Shown here piece by piece: positions 1,861 to 32,378 of a stretch of DNA of 34,995 nt (positions within the stretch are counted from its first letter, which is position 1; every line of letters starts with the position of its first letter). A model generated the notes under the pieces. It saw only the letters and a program-made list of their open reading frames with translations. It had not been told where the DNA came from and searched no databases. This DNA comes from Octopus sinensis (lineage: Eukaryota). The position numbers and the translations under genes are program-made. The stretch is from NCBI RefSeq assembly GCF_006345805.1, contig NW_021831710.1, forward strand, positions 1 through 34,995, given 5' to 3'.

Positions 1861-2076
1861 GGCGAACTGGCAGAAACGTATAGCACGCGGACGAAATGAT
1901 AGCGGTATTTCTATGCCATTATGTTCTGAGTTCAAATTCGCGATGACTGACTTTCATCCTTCGGGGTCGATAAATCAAGTACCAGTACGCACTGGGGTCG
2001 ATGTAATCGATTAAATATATTGTCTGTCCTGTTGTCCCCTCTATGAAAGCCCCTTGTGGGTAGGTAATAAAGAAAT
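1861..2076 (+). mobile_element. tRNA-derived SINE, family A (GGCGAACTGGCAGAA head)
   Basis: A-box-like TGGCAGAAAC, B-box-like GAGTTCAAATTC and central block CTTTCATCCTTCGGGGTCGATAAATCAAGTACCAG. Homologous copies at 8390, 10051, 17431, 22089 and 31290. Confidence 0.8.
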
Positions 2077-2531
2077 ATATAACATATATATGTGTATGCT
2101 GTATGTATATATGTATATACGCATCCATGTGTGTATGTACGTATGTATATGCATGTATGGATAGATGGATCTATGCATGTCTATATACGCATATATAAGC
2201 ATACGCTTGAATGTAAGTCTATGTATGTGAGTGTACATTATGTGTGTATATATATGTATATGTATGCATGTAGGTATATGTATATATGTCTGTGTGTGTA
2301 TGTGTGTGTGTAATAAGCAGGTGAAGGGAAGGGTGCACACTGCTATTGCCGAAGAATTTACTGATATAATTTATGATCTTACCTAAAAAAAATGAAGAAC
2401 TTACATATTTAGAGGTGGTGGTGGTATGTGTGTGTGGGGGGTATCTTCTGAAGAATCGATAACTTTCCATTCTATTGATTTAAAACCATAGTAATATACG
2501 AGCACGCAGACACACACATGCATATGAACAA

Positions 2532-2563
<32 letters not shown>

Positions 2564-2598
2564 GCGTGTATGTGTACGTGTGCGTGTGTATACAGAGA

Positions 2599-2615
2599 GA
2601 TAGATAGATAGATAT

Positions 2616-2663
<48 letters not shown>

Positions 2664-2739
2664 ACAGATAGATACACGCACACACACTCACGCACACACA
2701 CACACACACATATATATTATATGTATATATATTTGATAC

Positions 2740-2782
<43 letters not shown>

Positions 2783-2790
2783 GTATATAT
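2599..2790. repeat. (GATA)n, (CA)n and (TA)n microsatellites
   Basis: Direct reading. Confidence 0.95.
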
Positions 2791-2985
2791 TTGTGTGTTT
2801 AATTCTACATATGTATGTTTGAGTATTTTGATGTATGATATTAAAACTGTTATTCGCCATTTGACGTTAATCAATATTCTCGTATTTTATAACCTCATTT
2901 TTAACTCTCGCTCTCCCCTTGTTACTCACTCATTCTGCATGTATGCATGCCTGAGTGCTTTCGTGGGTGAGTTGTATTTGTTTTG

Positions 2986-3279
2986 TATGTGTGTGTGTGT
3001 AATGTGTGTGTGCGATGTGTGTGTGTGCGTAATAAAAGGGATAAGTAGCCGAAATGTCTTAACATTTTTTCCCGCAAGCTAGCAAGTATACACAAATACG
3101 CACTAACTTCAGCATTTCAACTGCTTGGGATACGTGGAACTCTGTATATGGATGCATCTTCAGAATCGGGATAGATGTCCGTTTATTGTTGTATTTAAGT
3201 CTAGTGTGTAGTGTATTATATACGCACTTGAAGGTCTCTGCTTCACTCTTCACTCTCTCCCTCTGTGTATATATTATTA

Positions 3280-3340
<61 letters not shown>

Positions 3341-4212
3341 GTATATATGTATGTATATATTATGTATGTAGGTATATATAGGCGTATATATATATATATA
3401 TAAGGGTATGTGCTCATGTACCCATCTGTCGACTTCTCTACGTTTCTCTTCTACTGTCGCTCTTTATGATTATATATAATATATATATCTATATATATAT
3501 ATATATATTATATATATATATGTATGTTATATATATATATATATATATATAGATATATTATGTACGTATATGTATGTGGTGTGTATGTGCACGCACATGT
3601 TTGTGTGTGTGTGCGTGTGTTATGGGATAAACTGAAATACATCTACTTGTGTGTCAGTGTATAAGTTTACGATGGAGGTGGAGAGGTTAAATTTGCGAAA
3701 ATGTGAAGACCGACAAGAAATATCTGATACCAAAATTGAGCAACAAATCAACTACGCCATAAATGTCGTTTAAATTTATAATTACTTTTCTGTATCATAT
3801 ATAAACACACACACACAAACACACACAGACTCATAATTTGTTCATATATATATTTATATATGTATGTATGGGTGAGTGCATATTTATGCTTTTTATATGT
3901 GTGCATGTGTGTATGCATATATATGGAAGTAGGTAGATGATTGTGAGAATGAGTGTAATAATTTGTATATTTCTCTATAATTACCACAGCCATAAAAAAT
4001 CTATATAAAATCCTATATAACTGCACGTACACATGTATATATGTACATACATAATTACGTGCACGTTTTTTCGCTTTTTCTTCTTTCTCTATTTCTGTTC
4101 CATCTCAAGCAGGCTCGATACGTTAAAGGCTTTTCCATTTTCCCCAGCCTCAAAATACTACACTGGTTGTTTACCCTCCGCCTGTCTTACTCTTTTGTTT
4201 TTCTCTAAATTG

Positions 4213-4262
<50 letters not shown>

Positions 4263-4555
4263 ATATATAATATATATATATGTGTGTGTGTGTAAGTGTG
4301 TGTGTGCGATCGTGTGTGTGTGCGTAATAAAAGGATAAGTAGCCGAATGTCTTAACATTTTTTCCCGCAAGCTAGCAAGTATACCCAAATACGCACTAAC
4401 TTCAGCATTTCAACTGCTTGGGATACGTGGAACTCTGTATATGGATATCTTCAGAACGGGATAGATCCGTTTATTGTTGTATTTAAGTCTAGTGTGTAGT
4501 GTATTATATACGCACTTGAAGGTCTCTGCTTCACTCTTCACTCTCTCCCTCTGTG

Positions 4556-4587
<32 letters not shown>

Positions 4588-4768
4588 ATATATATCTATA
4601 TAGATATATATATATATGTATGTATGTATGTATATATGTATGTATATATATATGTATGTATGTATATAAGGCGTATATTATATATATATATAAGGGTATG
4701 TGCTCATTACCCATCTGTCGACTTCTCTACGTTTCTCTTCTACTGTCGCTCTTTATGGATAATATATA

Positions 4769-4839
<71 letters not shown>

Positions 4840-5470
4840 GTGGTATGTGTATGTCACGCACATGTTTGTGTGTGTTGTGCTGTGTTATGGGATAAACTGA
4901 AATACATCTACTTGTGTGTCATTGTATAAGTTTACGATGGAGGTGGAGAGGTTAAATTTGCGAAAATGTGAAGACGACAAGAATATCTGATACCAAAATT
5001 GAGCAACAAATCAACTACGCCATAATTGTCGTTTAAATTTATAATACTTTCTGTATCATATATAACACACACACACAAACACACACAGACTCATAATTTG
5101 TTCATATATATATTTATATATGTATGTATGGGTGAGTGCATATTTATGCTTTTTATATGTGTGCATGTGTGTATGCATATATATAGAAGTAGGTAGATGA
5201 TTGTGAGAATGAGTGTAATAATAATTGTTATTTCTCTATAATTACCACAGCCATAAAAAATCTATATAAAATCTATATAACTGCACGTACACATGTATAT
5301 ATGTAATACATAAATACGAGCACGTTTTTTCGCTTTTTCTTCTTTCTCTATTTCTGTTCCATCTCAAGCAGGCTCGATACGTAAAGCTTTCCATTTTCCC
5401 CAGCCTCAAAAGACTACACTTGGTTGTTTACCCTCCGCCTGTCTTACTCTTTTGTTTTTCTCTAAATTTG

Positions 5471-7225: not shown

Positions 7226-7749
7226 CGGTCGTGTGTGTATGCGCGAGTGTGCAAGTATGGGTATTATGAACACATGTATGTATGTAGGCACATAGTGTTG
7301 GCAGGTAGGTTGATATTCATATTTGTTTCCGTCTGTGTGTATGCGTCCGTGTATATATTACCGTCAAAGAAGTTAACAGATGAGTGCCGTAGTCTTTAGG
7401 TTATAGATGGAAACAGAAATAAAATTTTTATCGATTCCTGGTGTTGACAAAGCCATCATAAATTTTCAGATAAAATCTTTTGAATTTACGAGTCACACAC
7501 GCACAACTTCGCAAATGATCATAAAACGTAGTGGTGTATTTGTGAGATATATGAAGCATAGCAGAAGTGCAACGTAACTCAAGCTCAGCGGAACCGAAGT
7601 GCAGTTAACTGAAATGAATTGCTTACGACCGGAAATCCATTTTAATCCTTGGGTTTAACACGCCACTTTTCTAATCACACTTGATGTAAAACTCATACCG
7701 TTTGCTTAATACATCTCTTTTATGTCGGGCTAGTGGCAGAAAATTGAAC

Positions 7750-10227: not shown

Positions 10228-10322
10228 ATGTGTACATGATATGTGTGTGTGTGTGTGTATGTGTGTGTGTGTATGTGCGTGCGTGCATGTGTATAAATAT
10301 ATACATTCTTTTATTCGTTTAT

Positions 10323-10709
10323 TCTTATACTTGTTTCAGTCATTTAACTACGGTCATGCTGGAGCACCGCCTTTTGTTTTCCGTGTAAGCCTAGTACTTA
10401 TTCGATCGGTCATCTTTTGCCGAATCGCTAAGTTACGGGGACGTAAATACACCAGCATCGGCTGTCAAGCGATGTTGGGGGAACAAACACACACACAAAC
10501 ATATACACACACATACATACAGACACACACACACACATATACATACACACACACATATATATATATATATATATGACGGGCTCCTTTCAGTTTCCGTCTA
10601 TCAAATGCACTCATAAGGTGTAGGTCGGGCCGAGGCTATAGAAGAAAACACTTGCCCAATGCATCACGCGGTGGTTGGTAAGTAAGCTTCTTACCACACA
10701 GCCACCCTG
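10323..10709 (-). mobile_element. tRNA-derived SINE, family C (GTGGCTGTGTGGTAAG head, internal CA/TA microsatellite)
   Basis: Homologous to 18416-18876 and 32050-32378. Shared blocks: GGCGGTGCTCCAGCATG, GATGCTGGTGTATTTACGTCCCCGTAACTTAGC, GACGGAAACTGAAAG. Confidence 0.85.
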
Positions 10710-18415: not shown

Positions 18416-18637
18416 CTCTTTCTCTTTTACTTGTTTCAGTCATTTGACTGCGGTCATGCTGGAGCAGCGCTTTTAATCGAGCAACTCGACCCTGGGACTT
18501 ATTCTTTTGTAAGCCCAGTACTTATTTTATCGGTCCCTTTTGCCGAACCGCTAAGTAACGGGGATATAACACAAACCAGCATCGGTTGTCAAGCGTTATT
18601 AGGGGGAGAAACACACACACACCATACACACATACAC

Positions 18638-18685
<48 letters not shown>

Positions 18686-18876
18686 TATAATAACATATAC
18701 ATAATATATACAACACGGGCTTCTTTTAGTTTCCGTCTACCAAATCCAAAACTCAACAAGGTTTTGGTCGGCCCGAAGCTATAGTAGAAGACACTTGCCC
18801 AAGGTGCCACGCAGTGGGACTGAACCCGGAACCATGTGGCTGGTAAACAAGCTACTTACCACACAGCCACTCCTGT
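18416..18876 (-). mobile_element. Near full-length tRNA-derived SINE, family C
   Basis: Minus-strand head ACAGGAGTGGCTGTGTGGTAAGTAGC...CCGGGTTCAGTCCCACTGCGTGGCACCTTGGGCAAGTGTCTTCTACTATAG (A box TGGCTGTGTGG, B box GGTTCAGTCCC). Internal TA/CA tract; tail ...CAGTCAAATGACTGAAACAAGTAAAAGAG. Confidence 0.9.
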
Positions 18877-20197: not shown

Positions 20198-20870
20198 CTG
20201 GATTTTCCCAGCAAAAACTTGGATTTGCCCCAGCAAAAAACCTGAATTTGCCCCATGAATAAAACTGGTGGGAACACAAACCACCTCCAGTGCTTGAAAA
20301 TGACCACATCTCACTCCTCTGGAACTTCACCATTCAAACTGACAGAAAGATTGATGCAAATAGGCCAGACATCATATTGAAAGACTTCAGACAAAGAACA
20401 TGCCTCCTCATTGATATGACTGTCCCAATCGATATAAAAGTATCTGTCAAGACCTACCAAAAACTGATCAAATATAAAGATCTTGAAATAGAAATCAGCA
20501 AAATGTGGAACCTGAAAACTAAAAAATACCTGTTGTCATAGGTGCCCTGGGAATGATAGCGAAAGGGGCTGGTTGCTACCTAACTCAGATACCAGGAAAC
20601 CACAAAATGGCAGAAATGCAAAAGATAGTGCTCATGGGAACTGCTCATATCCTACGCAAAATACTTTCTATGTAATCTCAGAGTTTAAAACAAACATAAT
20701 TTTCGTTTTTTTTTTTAATTTTGGACATTCACTAGTACAACACCAAAAAAAAACCAAATATATGGCACTCTAGGCATAACAACAGCATGAACTTCCAACC
20801 TGTTGTCTCTTGAAGTTCCTGGGTGAGACTTGGAACCACTTGTACAAATATAAAGCAAAAGTCAAACATA
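20198..20870 (+). mobile_element. 5'-truncated R4/Dong-type non-LTR retrotransposon: restriction-like endonuclease C-terminus (20256-20675, one frameshift near 20525) plus 3' UTR
   Basis: WWEHKPPPVLENDHISLLWNFTIQTDRKIDANRPDIILKDFRQRTCLLIDMTVP...KYKDLEIEISKMWNLKTK/IPVVIGALGMI...QKIVLMGTAHILRKILSM* carries the PD-(D/E)xK RLE motif (RPD...IDMTVP...KY.DL). It lies between (TAA)n/(GAA)n and (TAA)n. Confidence 0.88.
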
Positions 20871-26229: not shown

Positions 26230-27269
26230 ATCATTGTTTGGGATAAAGCAACTATGTCCCATAATTGGGCCCTACGAGCACTTGATACCACAATGAGAAA
26301 CCTTAAATCGAGCAACAACATCCTTGAAGGTGCCGCTCTACTTCTTGCAGGAGATTTTTGACAAACTCTGCCTATTATACCCAAAGGAACACCCGCTTAT
26401 GAACTTAATGCCTGCCTTAAAAAATTCCTCCTTTTCTCAAATGTCCAATCGAAACAACTCACCATCGACATAAGATCATTCATGCATACTGGTTAGTCTG
26501 CAACCCAGTTTTCGCAGATGCTCTTATAATCGGAAATAGCCAAATTTCGTCCGACGACACCAGATACATTGACACTACTACCATTGGCCATACTGTCACC
26601 AACTCTGATGACTCATGGTCTGCCGTTTACCCAAACCATGCAACGGAATACATAAAAGCAGGTTGGCTTCGCGGCAACGCTGTTCTTGCATCTGCAAATG
26701 CAGCTGTCATCACTCTTAACCACGACTTACTCAGTCAGCTACCTTCTCAAGAACATTGTTACAGATCAGTTGACACCCTTACCGACCTCGATCAGGTTAC
26801 ACATATTCCAACAGAATTTCTCAACTCCCATGAACTCCCTCCTAATGAGGGAGTTCACTTAAAAGTCGGTTGCCCTGTCATCCTCCTACGCAATCTAAAC
26901 ACACCCACACTATGCAACAGAACGCGTCTTGTGGTCAAACAAACGACTGACTGCGTCATTGAATCCCAAATTATCACGGGTCACAGCTAAAACGATACCG
27001 TTTTCATTCTGAATATTCCGCTAATACCAACAGACTGCTCCTATCCTATGCAGAGACTTCAGTTTCCTCTCAAACTCAGCTACGCCATGACAATTAACAA
27101 AGCACAAGATCAGTCGCTGAAAACTGTCGGATTGGACTTTCGAACGTCGTGCTTTTCGCATGGACAGTTCTACGTCGGTTGTTCCAGAGTTCAGCATACA
27201 GACAACTTATTCATCTATGCTCCTGAAGGAAAAGCCAAAAACGTCGTCTACAAAGCAATCCTACAGTAG
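26230..27269 (+). pseudogene. Helitron RepHel PIF1-like (SF1) helicase, C-terminal part, with in-frame stops and frameshifts
   Basis: IIVWDKATMSHNWALRALDTTMRNLK (Walker B region), LLAGDF*QTLPIIPKG (motif III), LKVGCPVILLRNL...LCNRTRL, and RLQFPLKLSYAMTINKAQDQSLKTVGLD...CFSHGQFYVGCSRV...NVVYKAILQ* (motifs V and VI). Confidence 0.92.
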
Positions 27270-27856
27270 TTATTCTTCTGCAATCTTCACATCTACGCCA
27301 AACTGTAGCCGTTAGCAATCAGACTTCCTGCAAGTATTTCATTGATATTTTGCTTCATTACCCTGATTGCAGTTAACAGTATATTACGCTTCTTTCTTCA
27401 TGCATGCTGTTTACTCATAAGCATGCTCTGACATTTATTTTTGTAAATACCATTATTTAATTTGTGTGTTATAAATGTTTCCTTTTCGTTATCACACATG
27501 ACTTTCATTGAAAAAAAAAGCTTCAATGCGGTTGTGTCAAGCATTACGAGAAAAAATAAGTACATGATACAAAACGCTTCAACTAAGATATAGGATCCCT
27601 ATATATCTACTGAATTGCGATCTCATTTCATGGACTTTTATTTATTACTAACGGCCAAATTTATATTCAAGAAATTTTATTCATTGCGTAAGTTGCTTAA
27701 TACCATATCATAAACTGTTAACGAAAATAGTAATTATATATATTTTGCTTATCAACTTGAAATGACTTCTAACTGAGGGCTAGTTCAACTTAAACCGTCT
27801 ACGGGGGTGCACCAAATTATAAATTACACCGTCCAAAGGACGGGTGCATTTGCTAC
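26230..27856 (+). mobile_element. Helitron relic including its 3' terminus
   Basis: The helicase is followed by the hairpin CCGTCC-AAA-GGACGG (27829-27843) and then CTAC|T (degenerate CTRR followed by T) at 27853-27857. The 5' end is not identified. Confidence 0.8.
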
Positions 27857-28226
27857 TTTACAAATAATAAGAAACTTTGGGCAAACTCTTGTATAGGATC
27901 GCGAACCGACTAATTCCTTGTGGATGAATTTAGTAGAAGAAACTCTCTAGAAGCCCGTAGATTATATATATATATATATATATATAGGACACAGAAGTGT
28001 GTCTATGGCCAGCTGGAGGAGTGTGTCCTCTGGGGCTAAAAACTACAGTAGCATCCACCTTAGGGTTAGCCATATTGAAATGGCAAAAATACGTCACGAT
28101 GTGTTACCGCTACTGTATATAACTCACTTTGATATCTATCATTGTTTGATTTCACTTTTCAATATCAGCGACAGTGGACGCTGGAAAAAGTATAAGTATT
28201 TGTGAAGGAAATCTAATTCTCGCCGA

Positions 28227-28296
28227 CAACTATGATTGTCACACGCTGACGAGAGGTCAATACCTCGAAACTCGAGTCCGTGTGTATCATAAGTTG
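28227..28296 (+). ncRNA. Type I hammerhead ribozyme, copy 1 (predicted cleavage after 28278)
   Basis: CAACTATGAT-TGT-CACACG-CTGACGA-GAGG(tcaata)CCTC-GAAA-CTCGAG-TC|CGTGTG-T-ATCATA-A-GTTG. Confidence 0.93.
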
Positions 28297-28578
28297 AAGA
28301 CGGGAAGGATTGACTTCCCTTTGCAAATACTGACAGGACACAGAAAGTGTGTCTATGACCAGCTGGAGGAGTGGTCCTCCTGGGGCTAAAAATACAGTAG
28401 CATCCACCCTTAGGGGTTAGCCATATTGAAATGGCAAAAATACGTCACGATGTGTTACCGCTACTGTATATAACTCACTTTGATATTTATCATTGTTTGA
28501 TTTCACTTTTTCAATATCAGCGACAGTGGACGCTGGAAAAAGTATAAGTATTTGTGAAGGAAATCTAATTCTCGCCGA

Positions 28579-28648
28579 CAACTATGATTGTCACACGCTG
28601 ACGAGAGGTCAATACCTCGAAACTCGAGTCCGTGTGTATCATAAGTTG
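28579..28648 (+). ncRNA. Type I hammerhead ribozyme, copy 2 (predicted cleavage after 28630)
   Basis: Identical to copy 1. Confidence 0.93.
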
Positions 28649-28934
28649 AAGACGGGAAGGATGACTTCCCTTTGCAAATACTGACAGGACACAGAAAGTG
28701 TGTGTCTATGACCAGCTGGAGGAGTGTGTCCTCCTGGGGCTAAAAACTACAGTAGCATCCACCCTTAGGGGTTAGCCATATTGAAATGGCAAAAAATACG
28801 TCACGATGTGTTACCGCTACTGTATATAACTCACTTTGATATTTATCATTGTTTGATTTCACTTTTTCAATATCAGCGACAGTGGACGCTGGAAAAAGTA
28901 TAAGTATTTGTGAAGGAAATCTAATTCTCGCCGA

Positions 28935-29004
28935 CAACTATGATTGTCACACGCTGACGAGAGGTCAATACCTCGAAACTCGAGTCCGTGTGTATCATAA
29001 GTTG
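28935..29004 (+). ncRNA. Type I hammerhead ribozyme, copy 3 (predicted cleavage after 28986)
   Basis: Identical to copy 1. Confidence 0.93.
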
Positions 29005-29285
29005 AAGACGGGAAGGATGACTTCCCTTTGCAAATACTGACAGGACACAGAAAGTGTGTCTATGACCAGCTGGAGGAGTGTGTCCTCCTGGGGCTAAAAA
29101 CTACAGTAGCATCCACCCTTAGGGGTTAGCCATATTGAAATGGCAAAAAATACGTCACGATGTGTTACCGCTACTGTATATAACTCACTTTGATATTTAT
29201 CATTTTGATTTCACTTTTTCAATATCAGCGACAGTGGACGCTGGAAAAAGTATAAGTATTGTGAAGGAAATCTAATTCTCGCCGA

Positions 29286-29354
29286 CAACTATGATTGTCA
29301 CACGCTGACGAGAGGTCAATACCTCGAAACTCGAGTCCGTGTGTATCATAAGTG
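29286..29354 (+). ncRNA. Type I hammerhead ribozyme, copy 4 (predicted cleavage after 29337)
   Basis: Core identical to copy 1; one T is missing in the distal helix I (AGTG instead of AGTTG). Confidence 0.92.
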
Positions 29355-29507
29355 AAGACGGGAAGGATGACTTCCCTTTGCAAATACTGACAGGACACAG
29401 AAAGTGTGTCTATGGCCAGCTGGAGGAGTGTGTCCTCCTGGGGCTAAAAACTACAGTAGCATCCACCCTTAGGGGTTAGCTATATTAAAATGGCAAAAAT
29501 ACGTCAC

Positions 29508-29544
<37 letters not shown>

Positions 29545-29644
29545 ATAATATAATATAATATAATATAATATAATATAATATGTACATACTCATATGTGTG
29601 TGTGTGTGTGTGTGTGTTTGCATGTATCTGTATATAGTTGTGGT

Positions 29645-31966: not shown

Positions 31967-32014
<48 letters not shown>

Positions 32015-32049
32015 CACATATATATATATGTGTGTGTGTGTGTGTACAT

Positions 32050-32378
32050 TCTTTTATTCTTTTCTCTTTTACTTGTTACAGTCATTTGACTGCGGCCACA
32101 CTGCATCATCGCTTTAAAGAGTAGTAGTCGAAGAAATTGACCCCAGCACTATTTTTTGTAAGCCTAGTACGTATCATATCGGTTTCTTATGCCGAATCGC
32201 TAAGTTACGGGGACATAACCACACTAGCATCGGTTGGCAAGCGATGGCGTCGGAACAAACACACATATAAATATGTACACACACACAACACACACACACA
32301 TATACATATATATGGATATGACGGTCTTCTATTAGCTTCCGTCAACCCGATCCACTCAAAAGGCTTTAGTCGGCCTGA
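32050..32378 (-). mobile_element. 5'-truncated family C SINE
   Basis: ACTTGTTACAGTCATTTGACTGCGGCC, GCCGAATCGCTAAGTTACGGGGAC and an internal CA/TA tract; homologous to 18416-18876. Confidence 0.8.

What the first reader, a model, noticed from the sequence alone, without database searches (positions are those of the whole stretch)
27987..29507. Tandem ~350-bp repeat with an intact type I hammerhead ribozyme in every unit: candidate cephalopod retrozyme / circular-RNA-producing element
Seen in sequence: four full units plus a partial fifth. Each full unit has the complete hammerhead core: CUGACGA, helix II GAGG/CCUC with a UCAAUA loop, GAAA, helix III and a GUC triplet. Helix I is CACACG/CGUGUG, extended past a UGU/U internal loop by UAUGAU/AUCAUA and CAAC/GUUG. 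The catalytic core is identical in all four copies, while the rest of the unit carries indels. Predicted cleavage sites (28278, 28630, 28986, 29337) would release monomers of 352, 356 and 351 nt. Established knowledge: tandem type I hammerhead repeats of this size are the architecture of metazoan non-LTR retrozymes and ribozyme satellites (newt satellite 2, schistosome Sm-alpha, cave cricket pDo500, related repeats in corals and mussels), which are processed to linear and circular monomer RNAs. Inference: this is a retrozyme family in an octopus-like genome. I cannot check whether it has been described. The ORF track shows only spurious short ORFs here.
Basis: partly seen in the sequence, partly recalled or inferred. 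Interest (0 to 1): 0.93.

Follow-up and report, generated by a model that had tools for sequence, protein, structure and literature searches.

The report
Octopus hammerhead-ribozyme retrozyme tandem repeat
This is a young, non-coding mobile element in an octopus genome: a 4.3-unit tandem repeat of about 354 bp in which every unit carries an apparently intact self-cleaving hammerhead ribozyme. It belongs to a known class (animal "non-LTR retrozymes") that I did not find described for cephalopods, and its insertion junctions give clues to how such elements are copied into DNA.

Summary
Window 27987-29507 is a 4.3-copy tandem repeat with a period of about 354 bp. It holds four full-length type I hammerheads on the + strand (Rfam RF00163, 32.2 bits, just under the gathering score of 34). 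Cleavage after GUC would release monomers of 352, 356 and 351 nt.

The octopus origin is supported. A neighbouring Helitron remnant is closest to Octopus sinensis and O. bimaculoides proteins. O. sinensis chromosomal DNA also holds a 98%-identical two-unit copy with intact ribozymes, plus an ~80%-diverged subfamily.

The array meets every sequence-level criterion for a metazoan non-LTR retrozyme. Self-cleavage and circular RNA could not be tested here.

New from this work:
- All six outer junctions of three independent insertions abut (TA)n.
- Both young arrays end at the same unit nucleotide (…ACGUCAC, nt 174), and the inverted piece of the third insertion ends within 3 nt of it.
- The 5' ends vary, and two insertions carry 5' inversions.
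- Arrays run through the cleavage site one to four times.

This fits target-primed reverse transcription of a template that is continuous across the cleavage site. The centre of the window's array was also duplicated at the DNA level afterwards.

Verdict: a new member of a known kind, of moderate interest.

The parts
27963..27986 (.). (TA)12 tract directly abutting the 5' end of the array; part of the (TA)n microsatellite used as the target or priming site
   Evidence: Sequence. A random placement puts both edges against a (TA)>=8 run only 0.24% of the time. The same arrangement is seen at the two O. sinensis insertions.
27987..29507 (+). The whole element: a 4.27-unit head-to-tail array of a ~354-bp non-coding unit (subfamily A). 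It starts at unit nt 57 and ends at unit nt 174, numbering from the cleavage site.
   Evidence: TRF, unit alignment, unit numbering.
28224..28300 (+). Hammerhead 1 with extended helix I (Rfam core 28240-28284); predicted cleavage between 28278 and 28279
28576..28652 (+). Hammerhead 2 (Rfam core 28592-28636); predicted cleavage between 28630 and 28631
28932..29008 (+). Hammerhead 3 (Rfam core 28948-28992); predicted cleavage between 28986 and 28987
29283..29358 (+). Hammerhead 4 (Rfam core 29299-29343); predicted cleavage between 29337 and 29338. The distal helix I 3' strand has lost one T.
28279..28630 (+). Monomer 1 (352 nt), the RNA that would be released by cleavage at two successive sites
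   Evidence: Circular fold -113.6 kcal/mol, z = -5.9.
28631..28986 (+). Monomer 2 (356 nt), used as the reference unit for numbering
   Evidence: Circular fold -112.0 kcal/mol, z = -5.8.
28987..29337 (+). Monomer 3 (351 nt)
   Evidence: Circular fold -107.4 kcal/mol, z = -5.1.
28795..28812 (+). Predicted hairpin AAUACGU-CACG-AUGUGUU (unit nt 165-182). The recurrent 3' terminus of insertions (nt 174|175) lies in its tetraloop. The same sequence recurs in each unit.
   Evidence: Circular MFE pair table; junction comparison. The structure is predicted only.
29501..29507 (+). The 3' terminus of the element, …ACGTCAC, identical to the 3' terminus of the independent O. sinensis insertion L027
29508..29532 (.). 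(TA)n tract directly abutting the 3' end of the array

Best explanation
The array is a recently inserted, non-autonomous retroelement of the metazoan non-LTR retrozyme type, in an Octopus genome.

Proposed life cycle, marked as shown or inferred:
1. A genomic array is transcribed on the + strand as a multimer (inferred; no promoter was identified).
2. Each type I hammerhead cuts after GUC and releases ~354-nt monomers (inferred from an intact core and helices). Helix III is only 2 bp capped by the palindromic tetraloop UCGA. Cleavage is therefore probably helped by two neighbouring ribozymes pairing through an 8-bp intermolecular helix III, a 'double hammerhead' (inferred from energetics and from conservation of the palindrome).
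3. [quoted passage not shown]
4. The reverse transcriptase of an autonomous element nicks a (TA)n microsatellite and primes cDNA synthesis on the RNA at a preferred internal site. That site is nt 174, in a predicted hairpin loop. The enzyme most likely comes from a Penelope-like element. Synthesis runs around the template one to more than four times, then stops at a variable point, sometimes with a 5' inversion. The genomic footprints are shown; the mechanism is inferred.
5. After insertion, the centre of this particular array was further duplicated or homogenised by unequal crossing-over (shown as a pattern of shared variants).
For: Ribozyme:
- Four full-length RF00163 matches with every core nucleotide present, and none on the other strand.
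- The descriptor gives no background hits in about 200 kb.
- Between subfamilies A and B, helix I keeps pairing through two double (compensatory) changes. The helix III tetraloop changes UCGA to UGCA and stays palindromic. That is 3 double changes against a shuffled mean of 0.8, and only 6 of 500 shuffles reach 3.

Double hammerhead:
- The helix III hairpin alone is +2.9 kcal/mol, whereas the 8-bp intermolecular duplex is -10.7 kcal/mol.
- The dimer MFE (-53.5, against -48.8 for two monomers) uses exactly that pairing.

Compact circle:
- Circular MFE is -107 to -114 kcal/mol, z = -5.1 to -5.9, with about 63% of bases paired and helix I closing the molecule.

Class features:
- GC is 42.6%, there are no credible ORFs or Pfam hits, and there is no tRNA.

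Mobility:
- A 98%-identical 1.95-unit copy with two hammerheads lies on O. sinensis chromosome CM016874.1 (L027 5223-5914, minus strand). Its flanks are unrelated to the window's.
- A third, ~80%-diverged insertion (subfamily B, 1.27 units) lies on CM016862.1 (L023).
- All six outer junctions of the three insertions abut (TA)n. For the window alone the chance is 0.24%.
- The 3' junction is identical in the window and in L027 (…AAATGGCAAAAATACGTCAC|TATATA). The outer end of the L023 inverted piece falls at the same unit position within 3 nt.
- The 5' ends differ (nt 57, 193/195 and 126). Two insertions carry inverted 5' pieces.
- Arrays pass through the intact GAGUC|CGUGUG site one to four times.

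Literature:
- Penelope-like elements carry hammerheads, prefer (TA)n targets and often have an adjacent inverted 5'-truncated copy (PMC8557442).
- Octopus genomes hold Penelope families, including recently active ones (PMC13282606 and PMC8967140).

Post-insertion growth:
- The inner three units share a derived A. The two edge units and L027 have G, and the edge units carry private substitutions.
Against: - No transcription, cleavage or circular RNA could be examined.
- The Rfam score is 1.8 bits below the curated threshold.
- Thermodynamic folding of the 77-nt domain prefers an alternative local pairing (-24.4 kcal/mol) over the canonical hammerhead secondary structure (-17.4 kcal/mol). Such models ignore the tertiary core, however.
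- The only subfamily-B ribozyme seen has U4 changed to C and two broken helix II pairs, so it is probably dead. If that reflects the subfamily master copy, ribozyme activity is not strictly needed for spread.
- Only three insertions were available, so the '3' end at nt 174' rule rests on three of five cDNA start points.
- No Penelope-like RT lies near any copy. The one autonomous element nearby is an APE-type LINE that inserted into the B copy with an ordinary 17-bp target-site duplication.
- No copy was found in 62 kb of O. bimaculoides DNA.
- No ORF derived from the repeat appears in the protein collection, although that test has low power.
Confidence: 0.72

Rival explanations
1. Ordinary satellite or minisatellite growth. 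A single fragment carrying a hammerhead, for example the terminal repeat of a Penelope-like element, landed here once. It was then amplified locally by unequal crossing-over or replication slippage. The ribozyme is a passenger and no circular RNA intermediate is involved. This is the scenario favoured for array growth by Li et al. 2026.
For: - The inner three units share a derived A and are substitution-identical, while the edge units keep the ancestral G and carry private changes. That is the classic signature of DNA-level homogenisation in the middle of an array.
- Li et al. 2026 propose local amplification of PLE terminal sequences.
Against: - Three independent insertions with different unit counts (4.27, 1.95 and 1.27) all sit in (TA)n.
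- Two of them share the identical 3' junction although their flanks are unrelated.
- Even the smallest insertions already span more than one unit and cross the cleavage site.
- 5' inversions are products of reverse transcription, not of unequal crossing-over.
- DNA-level growth therefore explains part of this array's length but not its origin or dispersal.
Confidence: 0.12
2. The element is the same, but the template for reverse transcription is a linear, uncleaved multimeric transcript with a defined 3' end at …GUCAC, not a circular monomer.
For: - The constant 3' end at nt 174 is what one expects if the RNA simply ends there.
- Arrays that cross the cleavage site only require that the template was uncut, not that it was circular.
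Against: - Nothing in the unit explains a defined RNA 3' end at nt 174. There is no downstream T-run or clear polyadenylation signal in the sequence (by eye).
- A read-through transcript of a genomic array would normally carry flanking sequence into new copies, and none is seen at any of the three insertions.
- An inverted piece also starts at nt 174-177 in L023. That means this site was used for internal priming, which fits a preferred initiation site better than an RNA end.
Confidence: 0.18
3. The element is mobilised by a microsatellite-targeting LINE, such as the Dong/R4 lineage that is abundant and recently active in octopus, and not by a Penelope-like element.
For: - O. vulgaris has 1,129 recently active Dong-R4 insertions against 329 Penelope insertions (PMC13282606).
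- From my own knowledge, R4/Dong-clade LINEs target simple repeats.
- A constant 3' end, 5' truncation and 5' inversion (twin priming) are generic hallmarks of LINE-type target-primed reverse transcription.
Against: - Hammerheads are a signature of Penelope-like elements, which also show a (TA)n preference and adjacent inverted 5'-truncated copies (PMC8557442).
- Retrozyme units are phylogenetically related to PLE pseudo-LTRs in vertebrates (Li et al. 2026).
- The two LINE 3' regions available here share nothing with the unit, but neither of them is a Dong element.
Confidence: 0.2
4. An inert relic. The hammerhead motif is intact by recency alone. The array is not transcribed, or the ribozyme does not cleave, and the family is no longer active.
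For: - Invariance of the core within a 97-100% identical array carries no information.
- The score is below Rfam's gathering cut-off.
- The subfamily-B core is degenerate.
- No ORF-derived trace of the repeat appears in assemblies of public runs.
Against: - Copies at unrelated loci are 98% identical and the units within arrays are nearly identical, so the family was moving very recently.
- Helices I and III show compensatory changes between subfamilies, which points to past selection on the RNA structure.
Confidence: 0.1
5. The repeat is cargo or an internal satellite of the adjacent Helitron.
For: - A Helitron helicase remnant ends about 720 bp upstream (26421-27266; Pfam Pif1_2B, 1e-9).
- Two of the five O. 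sinensis Helitron-paralogue loci also contain family members.
Against: - Helitron homology to three octopus paralogues stops at window position ~27855-27866, about 100 bp before the (TA)n tract and the array.
- In L027 and L023 the copies lie 5-9 kb away, on either side and in either orientation. Three other O. sinensis paralogue loci and all three O. bimaculoides loci have none.
- The array has its own (TA)n junctions.
Confidence: 0.02

Closest known systems
Non-LTR retrozymes of the mussel Mytilus galloprovincialis (Cervera & de la Pena 2020, PMC7229834)
   Same: - The host is also a mollusc.
- A type I hammerhead lies in every unit of a ~350-390-bp non-coding, low-GC tandem repeat.
- The monomer is predicted to be highly self-paired.
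- The proposed route is self-cleavage, then host-ligase circularisation, then reverse transcription by an autonomous non-LTR element or PLE.
   Different: - There is no detectable sequence similarity outside the catalytic core. Unit sequences are species-specific according to that paper.
- Here, expression and circularity are untested.
- The (TA)n target, the fixed 3' terminus and the 5' inversions seen here are not reported for the mussel elements in the text I read.
Axolotl Rtz_353 / HHR_Amex2 and newt satellite 2 (PMC7229834)
   Same: - The unit is about 330-350 bp.
- It carries a type I hammerhead with a very short helix III capped by a palindromic tetraloop. HHR_Amex2 has a 2-bp stem plus tetraloop, as here.
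- Those ribozymes cleave poorly as monomers and well as dimers, which is the behaviour predicted here.
   Different: - The host is a vertebrate and the copy number is enormous (about 126,000 hammerhead motifs).
- Helix II of HHR_Amex2 has a U.U mismatch, whereas here helix II is a clean 4-5 bp.
- There is no sequence homology.
[quoted passage not shown] 2017; Craig et al. 2021, PMC8557442)
   Same: - The ribozymes are type I hammerheads arranged in tandem that act as dimers through a palindromic helix III.
- The elements insert into (TA)n, often with an adjacent inverted 5'-truncated copy and a partial-tandem structure.
   Different: - PLE hammerheads are described as minimal variants that lack helix III nucleotides and loop-loop contacts. 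This one has a 6-nt (or 4-nt) loop 2 and an internal loop in a long helix I.
- No RT/GIY-YIG ORF lies within the window or next to any copy.
Schistosome Sm-alpha and cave-cricket pDo500 ribozyme repeats
   Same: Both are type I hammerheads in short, repeated, non-coding genomic elements of invertebrates. This is from my own knowledge.
   Different: - Sm-alpha is a dispersed, SINE-like element thought to be transcribed by RNA polymerase III.
- I saw no convincing A/B boxes and no tRNA-like part here.
- This element is tandem and targets (TA)n.
Plant LTR retrozymes (Cervera et al. 2016, PMC4918200)
   Same: They share the overall logic of a non-autonomous retroelement that propagates through a ribozyme-processed circular RNA.
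   Different: Plant retrozymes have type III hammerheads inside ~350-bp LTRs, a PBS, a PPT and 4-bp target-site duplications, and they are mobilised by Gypsy elements. None of these features is present here.

Membership tests
Metazoan non-LTR retrozyme | A type I hammerhead ribozyme in every tandem unit (the definition of an 'active' retrozyme in Li et al. 2026) | tested here: met
   Four of four units give full-length RF00163 matches with an intact core. The score of 32.2 bits is 1.8 below Rfam's gathering score.
Metazoan non-LTR retrozyme | Head-to-tail repeats of ~150-450 bp, from dimers to large multimers | tested here: met
   4.27 units of 351-356 bp. The O. sinensis copies have 1.95 and 1.27 units.
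Metazoan non-LTR retrozyme | Low GC (<50%), no coding capacity, no LTR, PBS or PPT | tested here: met
   GC is 42.6%. There are only short spurious ORFs, with no Pfam hit and no database homologue. The array is bounded directly by (TA)n, with no terminal repeats other than the unit itself.
Metazoan non-LTR retrozyme | A dispersed multi-copy family in the host genome | tested here: met
   Two further independent insertions were found in about 104 kb of sampled O. sinensis DNA, with unrelated flanks. Genome-wide copy number was not measurable.
Metazoan non-LTR retrozyme | The monomer RNA is predicted to form a stable, highly self-paired circle in which the hammerhead can form | tested here: met
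   Circular MFE z = -5.1 to -5.9 with about 63% of bases paired, and helix I is formed in the MFE. The canonical hammerhead fold is 7 kcal/mol above the local MFE, so the 'free to form' part is only partly supported.
Metazoan non-LTR retrozyme | Efficient self-cleavage of transcripts at the hammerhead site | not testable with these tools
   This needs in vitro transcription of monomer and dimer constructs.
Metazoan non-LTR retrozyme | Accumulation of linear and circular monomer RNA in tissues | not testable with these tools
   No RNA data could be searched by nucleotide sequence. The ORF-based proxy searches were negative but have low power.
Metazoan non-LTR retrozyme | Co-occurrence with Penelope-like elements in the same genome | tested here: inconclusive
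   No PLE lies in the window or in the fetched loci. The literature reports Penelope families, some recently active, in O. vulgaris and O. bimaculoides and Naiad remnants in Octopus spp..
Penelope-like element (autonomous copy or its pseudo-LTR) | An RT plus GIY-YIG endonuclease ORF flanked by the repeat | tested here: not met
   There is no such ORF within the 35-kb window or within 10 kb of the L023 and L027 copies. The only RT nearby is an APE-type LINE that interrupted the L023 copy.
Penelope-like element (autonomous copy or its pseudo-LTR) | Insertion bias for (TA)n, partial tandems, and an adjacent inverted 5'-truncated copy | tested here: met
   All six outer junctions are in (TA)n, and inverted 5' pieces are present in L027 and L023. 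This supports 'works like, or is mobilised by, a PLE' but not membership.
Hammerhead ribozyme, type I (Rfam RF00163) | Conserved core C3-A9, G12-A14 and the N-U-H cleavage triplet, with helices II and III closed and helix I open | tested here: met
   The core reads CUGACGA … GAA A … GUC^C, and the alignment to the model is complete. Helices I and III are kept by compensatory changes in the diverged subfamily.
Hammerhead ribozyme, type I (Rfam RF00163) | Score at or above the curated gathering threshold | tested here: not met
   32.2 bits against 34. The shortfall comes from helix II and loop 2 letters that differ from the consensus, not from the core.
Dimeric ('double') hammerhead | A helix III too weak as a hairpin but palindromic, so that two ribozymes form an extended intermolecular helix III | tested here: met
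   ACUCGAGU is self-complementary. The hairpin is +2.9 kcal/mol, the duplex is -10.7 kcal/mol, and the dimer MFE adopts the duplex. The palindrome is kept as ACUGCAGU in subfamily B and as a wobble variant ACUUGAGU in L027. Kinetic dependence on dimers was not testable.

The most novel reading that the evidence does not exclude
The insertion junctions may be a genomic footprint of site-specific, rolling-circle reverse transcription of a ribozyme-made circular RNA. On this reading, a (TA)n-nicking enzyme primes cDNA synthesis at one preferred internal nucleotide (nt 174, in a hairpin loop, 174 nt from the ribozyme cut). It then copies round the circle several times, which creates a tandem array in a single event. 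If the enzyme is a Penelope-like RT, the closest relative of telomerase RT, this would be internal-template initiation on a circular RNA. It would give the still hypothetical retrozyme mobilisation step a defined, testable start site and target.
Probability: 0.3. Interest if true: 0.75.

Novelty: new member of a known kind. Interest (0 to 1): 0.5.

Why it matters
Retrozymes are the second known route to abundant circular RNAs in animals, besides back-splicing. They reach up to about 1% of total RNA in mussel tissues (PMC7229834). How they get back into DNA is still a hypothesis.

Cephalopods are a group whose RNA biology and transposon load attract wide interest. I found no paper in the searchable library that links hammerheads or retrozymes with them. 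Recent detailed octopus repeat annotations do not mention ribozymes, and Rfam's threshold would miss this motif. The family is probably sitting unrecognised among 'unknown' or tandem repeats.

This family is very young, with 98-100% identity between copies, and has clean junctions. That makes it a good system for settling three questions:
- Is the template circular?
- Where does reverse transcription start?
- Which autonomous element is the partner?

On its own, though, the element is an expected addition to a class already known from many invertebrate phyla.

Tried and rejected
- The Rfam gathering-threshold scan of the window returned nothing. Only the permissive scan shows the hammerheads.
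- I looked for other copies in the window by blastn of the unit against the masked window and found none.
- Exact look-up of two spurious ORFs spanning the unit found nothing on record. Protein-database searches with the ribozyme-spanning ORF and with a composite of all six-frame segments found no hits. These are low-power negatives.
- The pattern scan of metagenome contigs returned 22 contigs, mostly from one sample. They carry other type I hammerhead families with the same ACUCGAGUC helix III but are otherwise unrelated. The viral contig scan returned 0.
- The Helitron-cargo idea was rejected on boundaries and on inconsistent association.
- I first read L023 as two separate subfamily-B insertions. 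I corrected this to one insertion split by a LINE with a 17-bp target-site duplication.
- I rejected the idea that core invariance within the array shows selection (P about 0.08).
- I looked by eye for RNA polymerase III A/B boxes and ran a tRNA search, and found nothing convincing.
- The LINE 3' regions share no similarity with the unit.
- The bacterial promoter/terminator scanner and the phage, plasmid and E. coli collections were not used, because they are irrelevant to an animal genome.
- The species of the window could not be fixed more closely than the genus Octopus or a close relative. All matches to O. sinensis and O. bimaculoides flanking repeats are paralogous, at 72-88% identity.
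Full report
1. THE OBSERVATION

Tandem Repeats Finder reports one long-period array in the window: 27986-29507, period 356, 4.3 copies, 97% matches.

The 33-nt string CTGACGAGAGGTCAATACCTCGAAACTCGAGTC occurs exactly four times on the + strand. It ends at 28278, 28630, 28986 and 29337, which gives spacings of 352, 356 and 351 nt.

Rfam at gathering thresholds reports nothing for the window. A permissive scan of 27900-29600 gives four full-length matches to Hammerhead_1 (RF00163, type I). Each scores 32.2 bits against a gathering score of 34, with E = 1.1e-5, and covers model positions 1-45 of 45.

- Helix I is CACACG/CGUGUG, extended past a UGU/U internal loop by UAUGAU/AUCAUA and CAAC/GUUG.
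- The first core strand is CUGACGA.
- Helix II is GAGG/CCUC, with a possible fifth U-A pair.
- The second core strand is GAA.
- Helix III is A-C(UCGA)G-U.
- The cleavage triplet is GUC, followed by C.

A simple descriptor of my own (core plus three helices) found these four ribozymes, two in an O. sinensis locus, and nothing else. The search covered about 200 kb of comparable DNA on both strands. The motif is therefore not a chance product of AT-rich, repeat-rich sequence.

- The fourth copy has lost one T of the distal GUUG.
- The invariance of the core inside the array is not evidence of constraint. With about 20 variant events in 356 columns, the chance that none hits a 45-nt segment is about 0.08.
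- The three complete monomers differ from each other by no substitutions at all, only 5-7 single-base indel columns. These may be assembly errors, so 352/356/351 should be read as 'about 354'.

2. SURROUNDINGS AND ORGANISM

The 35-kb window has 35% GC and is packed with microsatellites. It has no credible long ORF, no tRNA and no second copy of the unit.

A filtered six-frame survey turned up one real coding remnant. At 26421-27266 (+) there is a 282-codon frame with one internal stop that matches the Pif1 2B domain (Pfam PF21530, 1e-9). This is the helicase of a Helitron.

Its best database relatives are annotated proteins of Octopus sinensis (72-75% identity) and O. bimaculoides (65-72%). 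Identity falls to 50% or less in other animals. I fetched the chromosomal DNA around eight such Octopus genes. The Helitron part of the window (26231-27866) aligns to them at about 82%, and several other interspersed repeats of the window align at 72-88%.

The window therefore comes from an Octopus or a close relative. The exact species cannot be named with these tools. Helitron homology stops about 100 bp before the array, so the array is not Helitron cargo.

3. OTHER COPIES

Locus L027 is O. sinensis GCA_006345805.1, chromosome CM016874.1, positions 9,799,928-9,821,806. It contains 1.95 units that are 97.7-98.3% identical to the window's unit (L027 5223-5914, minus strand). It has two hammerheads. 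One is identical to the window's (32.2 bits). The other has a C-to-U change in the helix III loop (29.5 bits). The DNA next to this copy is unrelated to the DNA next to the window's array, so these are independent insertions.

Locus L023 (chromosome CM016862.1) contains a second subfamily (B) that is 72-82% identical to the first. I first read it as two copies. In fact the sequence TTCATCGAAAACCGGTG occurs at 1786-1802 and again at 7226-7242. Between these lies a complete LINE, with ORF1 at 2044-3033 and a 987-aa ORF2 that matches Exo_endo_phos and RVT_1. Joining the two pieces gives a sequence collinear with unit positions 126 through 356 to 221. It is therefore one insertion of 1.27 units, later split by a LINE that made a 17-bp target-site duplication.

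That makes two insertions in about 104 kb of sampled O. sinensis DNA and none in 62 kb of O. bimaculoides DNA. The family must be fairly abundant in O. sinensis, but the sample is far too small and too biased for a copy-number estimate.

4. WHAT THE JUNCTIONS SAY

I number the unit from the cleavage site, using monomer 2 (28631-28986) as the reference. Searches give the following:

- Window insertion: (TA)12 | nt 57 … 4.27 units … nt 174 | (TA)n.
- L027 insertion: (TA)n | an inverted piece, the reverse complement of nt 182-208 | forward from nt 193/195 … 1.95 units … nt 174 | (TA)n.
- L023 insertion: (CA)n(TA)n | an inverted piece running from nt 174-177 back to nt 30 | forward from nt 126 … 1.27 units … nt ~221 | (TA)n.

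All six outer junctions abut (TA)n. For the window alone, a random placement does this 0.24% of the time.

The 3' junction of the window and that of L027 are letter-for-letter the same: …AAATGGCAAAAATACGTCAC|TATATA. The outer end of the L023 inverted piece falls at the same place, within 3 nt, in a subfamily that is 20% diverged.

In target-primed reverse transcription, the 3' end of the forward copy marks a point where cDNA synthesis began. In the twin-priming variant, so does the outer end of an inverted 5' piece. Three of the five such points are at nt 174-177, and all five lie within nt 174-221. The 5' ends are at three unrelated positions.

A constant 3' end, variable 5' truncation and 5' inversions are the classical marks of target-primed reverse transcription. 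(TA)n preference and an adjacent inverted 5'-truncated copy are described specifically for Penelope-like elements (Craig et al. 2021, PMC8557442).

Two further inferences follow:
- The 3' end is 174 nt away from the ribozyme cut, so the template was not a ribozyme-cleaved linear monomer primed at its end.
- Every array reads through intact GAGUC|CGUGUG sites one to four times and carries no foreign flanking sequence. The template was therefore continuous across the cut and consisted only of unit sequence. That describes either a circular monomer copied round and round or an uncleaved multimer with a precise end.

In the predicted circular fold, nt 174|175 sits in the CACG tetraloop of a 7-bp hairpin spanning nt 165-182. 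That is a prediction only.

5. THE RIBOZYME AND THE RNA

The monomer, folded as a circle, is far more stable than dinucleotide-shuffled controls. Its MFE is -107 to -114 kcal/mol, z = -5.1 to -5.9, with about 63% of bases paired. The long helix I closes the molecule. This matches the 'stable and highly self-paired' circles described for coral, mussel and axolotl retrozymes.

Helix III is only two base pairs closed by the palindromic tetraloop UCGA. As a hairpin it is unstable (+2.9 kcal/mol). Two copies can instead form an 8-bp intermolecular helix (-10.7 kcal/mol). The predicted dimer structure (-53.5 kcal/mol, against -48.8 for two monomers) uses exactly this pairing. This is the double-hammerhead arrangement known from newt and axolotl repeats, from avocado sunblotch viroid and from Penelope-like elements.

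Comparing subfamilies A and B (alignment A1), 92.7% of pair cells are standard pairs. There are three double (compensatory) changes:
- A-U to G-C in proximal helix I.
- A-U to G-C in distal helix I.
- C-G to G-C inside the helix III tetraloop, which keeps the palindrome.

Shuffles average 0.8 such pairs, and 6 of 500 reach three. With four distinct sequences this is suggestive, not proof.

The single subfamily-B ribozyme available has U4 changed to C and two broken helix II pairs. It is probably inactive, and I cannot tell whether that is a private decay or a property of the subfamily.

6. HOW THE ARRAY GREW

At alignment column 82, the leading and trailing units of the window, and both L027 units, have G. 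The three inner units have A. The leading and trailing units also carry private substitutions, while the inner three have none.

Rolling-circle copying of one template should give identical units. A derived state shared by adjacent inner units therefore indicates duplication or homogenisation of the centre after insertion. So the local-amplification scenario of Li et al. 2026 is partly right for this array. It does not explain the dispersed copies or their junctions.

7. COMPARISON WITH WHAT IS KNOWN

The element meets all sequence-level criteria for a metazoan non-LTR retrozyme (see the membership table). The functional criteria of cleavage and circular RNA could not be tested.

It is not itself a Penelope-like element, because no RT/GIY-YIG ORF accompanies any copy, but it inserts like one. 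The octopus literature reports Penelope and Dong-R4 families with recent activity. Either could be the partner. The hammerhead link and the (TA)n and inversion features favour Penelope.

The closest described relatives in kind are the mussel retrozymes (same phylum, similar unit size) and axolotl Rtz_353/HHR_Amex2 (same helix III design).

In four searches of the held library I found no paper that connects hammerheads or retrozymes with cephalopods. The exception is a passing mention of Octopus in the Naiad PLE paper, and those elements lack hammerheads. The library is incomplete, so an earlier mention elsewhere cannot be excluded.

8. VERDICT

It is a new member, in a new host group, of a known kind of element. 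A specialist would expect it rather than be surprised by it.

Its added value is the very young age of the family and the clean junctions. These point to (TA)n-targeted, target-primed reverse transcription that starts at a preferred internal site on a template continuous across the ribozyme cut.

Confidence that this is a retrozyme-type retroelement is about 0.85. Confidence in the full life cycle as stated is about 0.7. Interest is 0.5.

Noticed in passing
window 26231-27866 (coding remnant 26421-27266, + strand): A Helitron remnant. It has a 282-codon Pif1-type helicase frame with one in-frame stop (Pfam Pif1_2B, 1e-9) and is about 82% identical at the DNA level to paralogues in O. sinensis and O. 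bimaculoides. A GC-rich palindrome (caccgtcc…ggacgggtg, ~27829-27851) lies near the end of the homology and looks like a Helitron 3' terminal hairpin.
   Followed up: partly
window 20263-20672 (+): Two adjacent frame fragments (…LLWNFTIQTDRKIDANRPDIILKD… and …KIPVVIGALGMIAKG…GTAHILRKILS) resemble the C-terminal end of a LINE ORF2. A near-identical motif ends a 466-aa frame in L027 19261-20658. There is no Pfam hit.
   Followed up: partly
window 10239-10674, 18416-18875, 32001-32375: Three copies of a ~450-bp interspersed repeat, each next to CA/TA microsatellites. They are 72-82% identical to L025 5235-5755 and L024 6203-6545 and are probably one of the abundant octopus SINE-like families. No tRNA-like part was detected by ARAGORN.
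   Followed up: partly
window ~3060-3930 versus ~4350-5190: A local duplication with a period of about 1.29 kb. The same translated segment (HFFPQASKYTQIRTNFSISTAWDTWNSVYG) occurs at 3063 and 4356. The same 37-bp tandem-repeat consensus occurs at 3843-3925 and 5103-5184.
   Followed up: no
L023 1803-7225 (O. sinensis CM016862.1): An apparently full-length LINE with open ORF1 (330 aa, CCHC knuckle) and ORF2 (987 aa, APE endonuclease plus RVT_1). It inserted into the subfamily-B retrozyme copy with a perfect 17-bp target-site duplication (TTCATCGAAAACCGGTG), so it is probably a recently active element.
   Followed up: partly
L023 7244-7300: The subfamily-B hammerhead has a probably dead core (CCGACGA, and helix II pairs 10.1-11.1 and 10.4-11.4 broken). 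Helices I and III are nevertheless kept by compensatory changes. The parts of this insertion present twice (the inverted piece and the overlapping forward pieces) are 98% identical. It is unclear whether subfamily B spreads without an active ribozyme.
   Followed up: partly
L001-L022 (metagenome contigs, mostly sample Ga0126336): Other type I hammerhead families share the helix III and cleavage-site string GAAACUCGAGUC but have different helices I and II. An example is agcaaCUGAUGAGGUUCACUGAAGAACCGAAACUCGAGUCuugcuu, seen on 18 contigs. They presumably come from animal host DNA in a host-associated sample. L001 has two copies 662 bp apart.
   Followed up: partly
window unit nt 166-186 (e.g. 28796-28816): The sequence around the recurrent 3' terminus, AUACGUCACGAUGUGUUAC, resembles the ribozyme's own substrate strand GAGUC^CGUGUGUAU with two 1-nt insertions (GUC-A-CG-A-UGUGU). 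This could be chance or an old internal duplication of the cleavage-site region.
   Followed up: no
window 28279-29337: The three inner monomers differ only by single-base or two-base indels (9 or so events) and by no substitutions. That ratio is unusual for real mutations and suggests long-read assembly errors in this repeat.
   Followed up: no
window 27988-28005: The array's 5' end starts exactly at a small hairpin of the unit (GACACA-GAA(A)-GUGUGUC). This may mark where reverse transcription stalled or switched.
   Followed up: no
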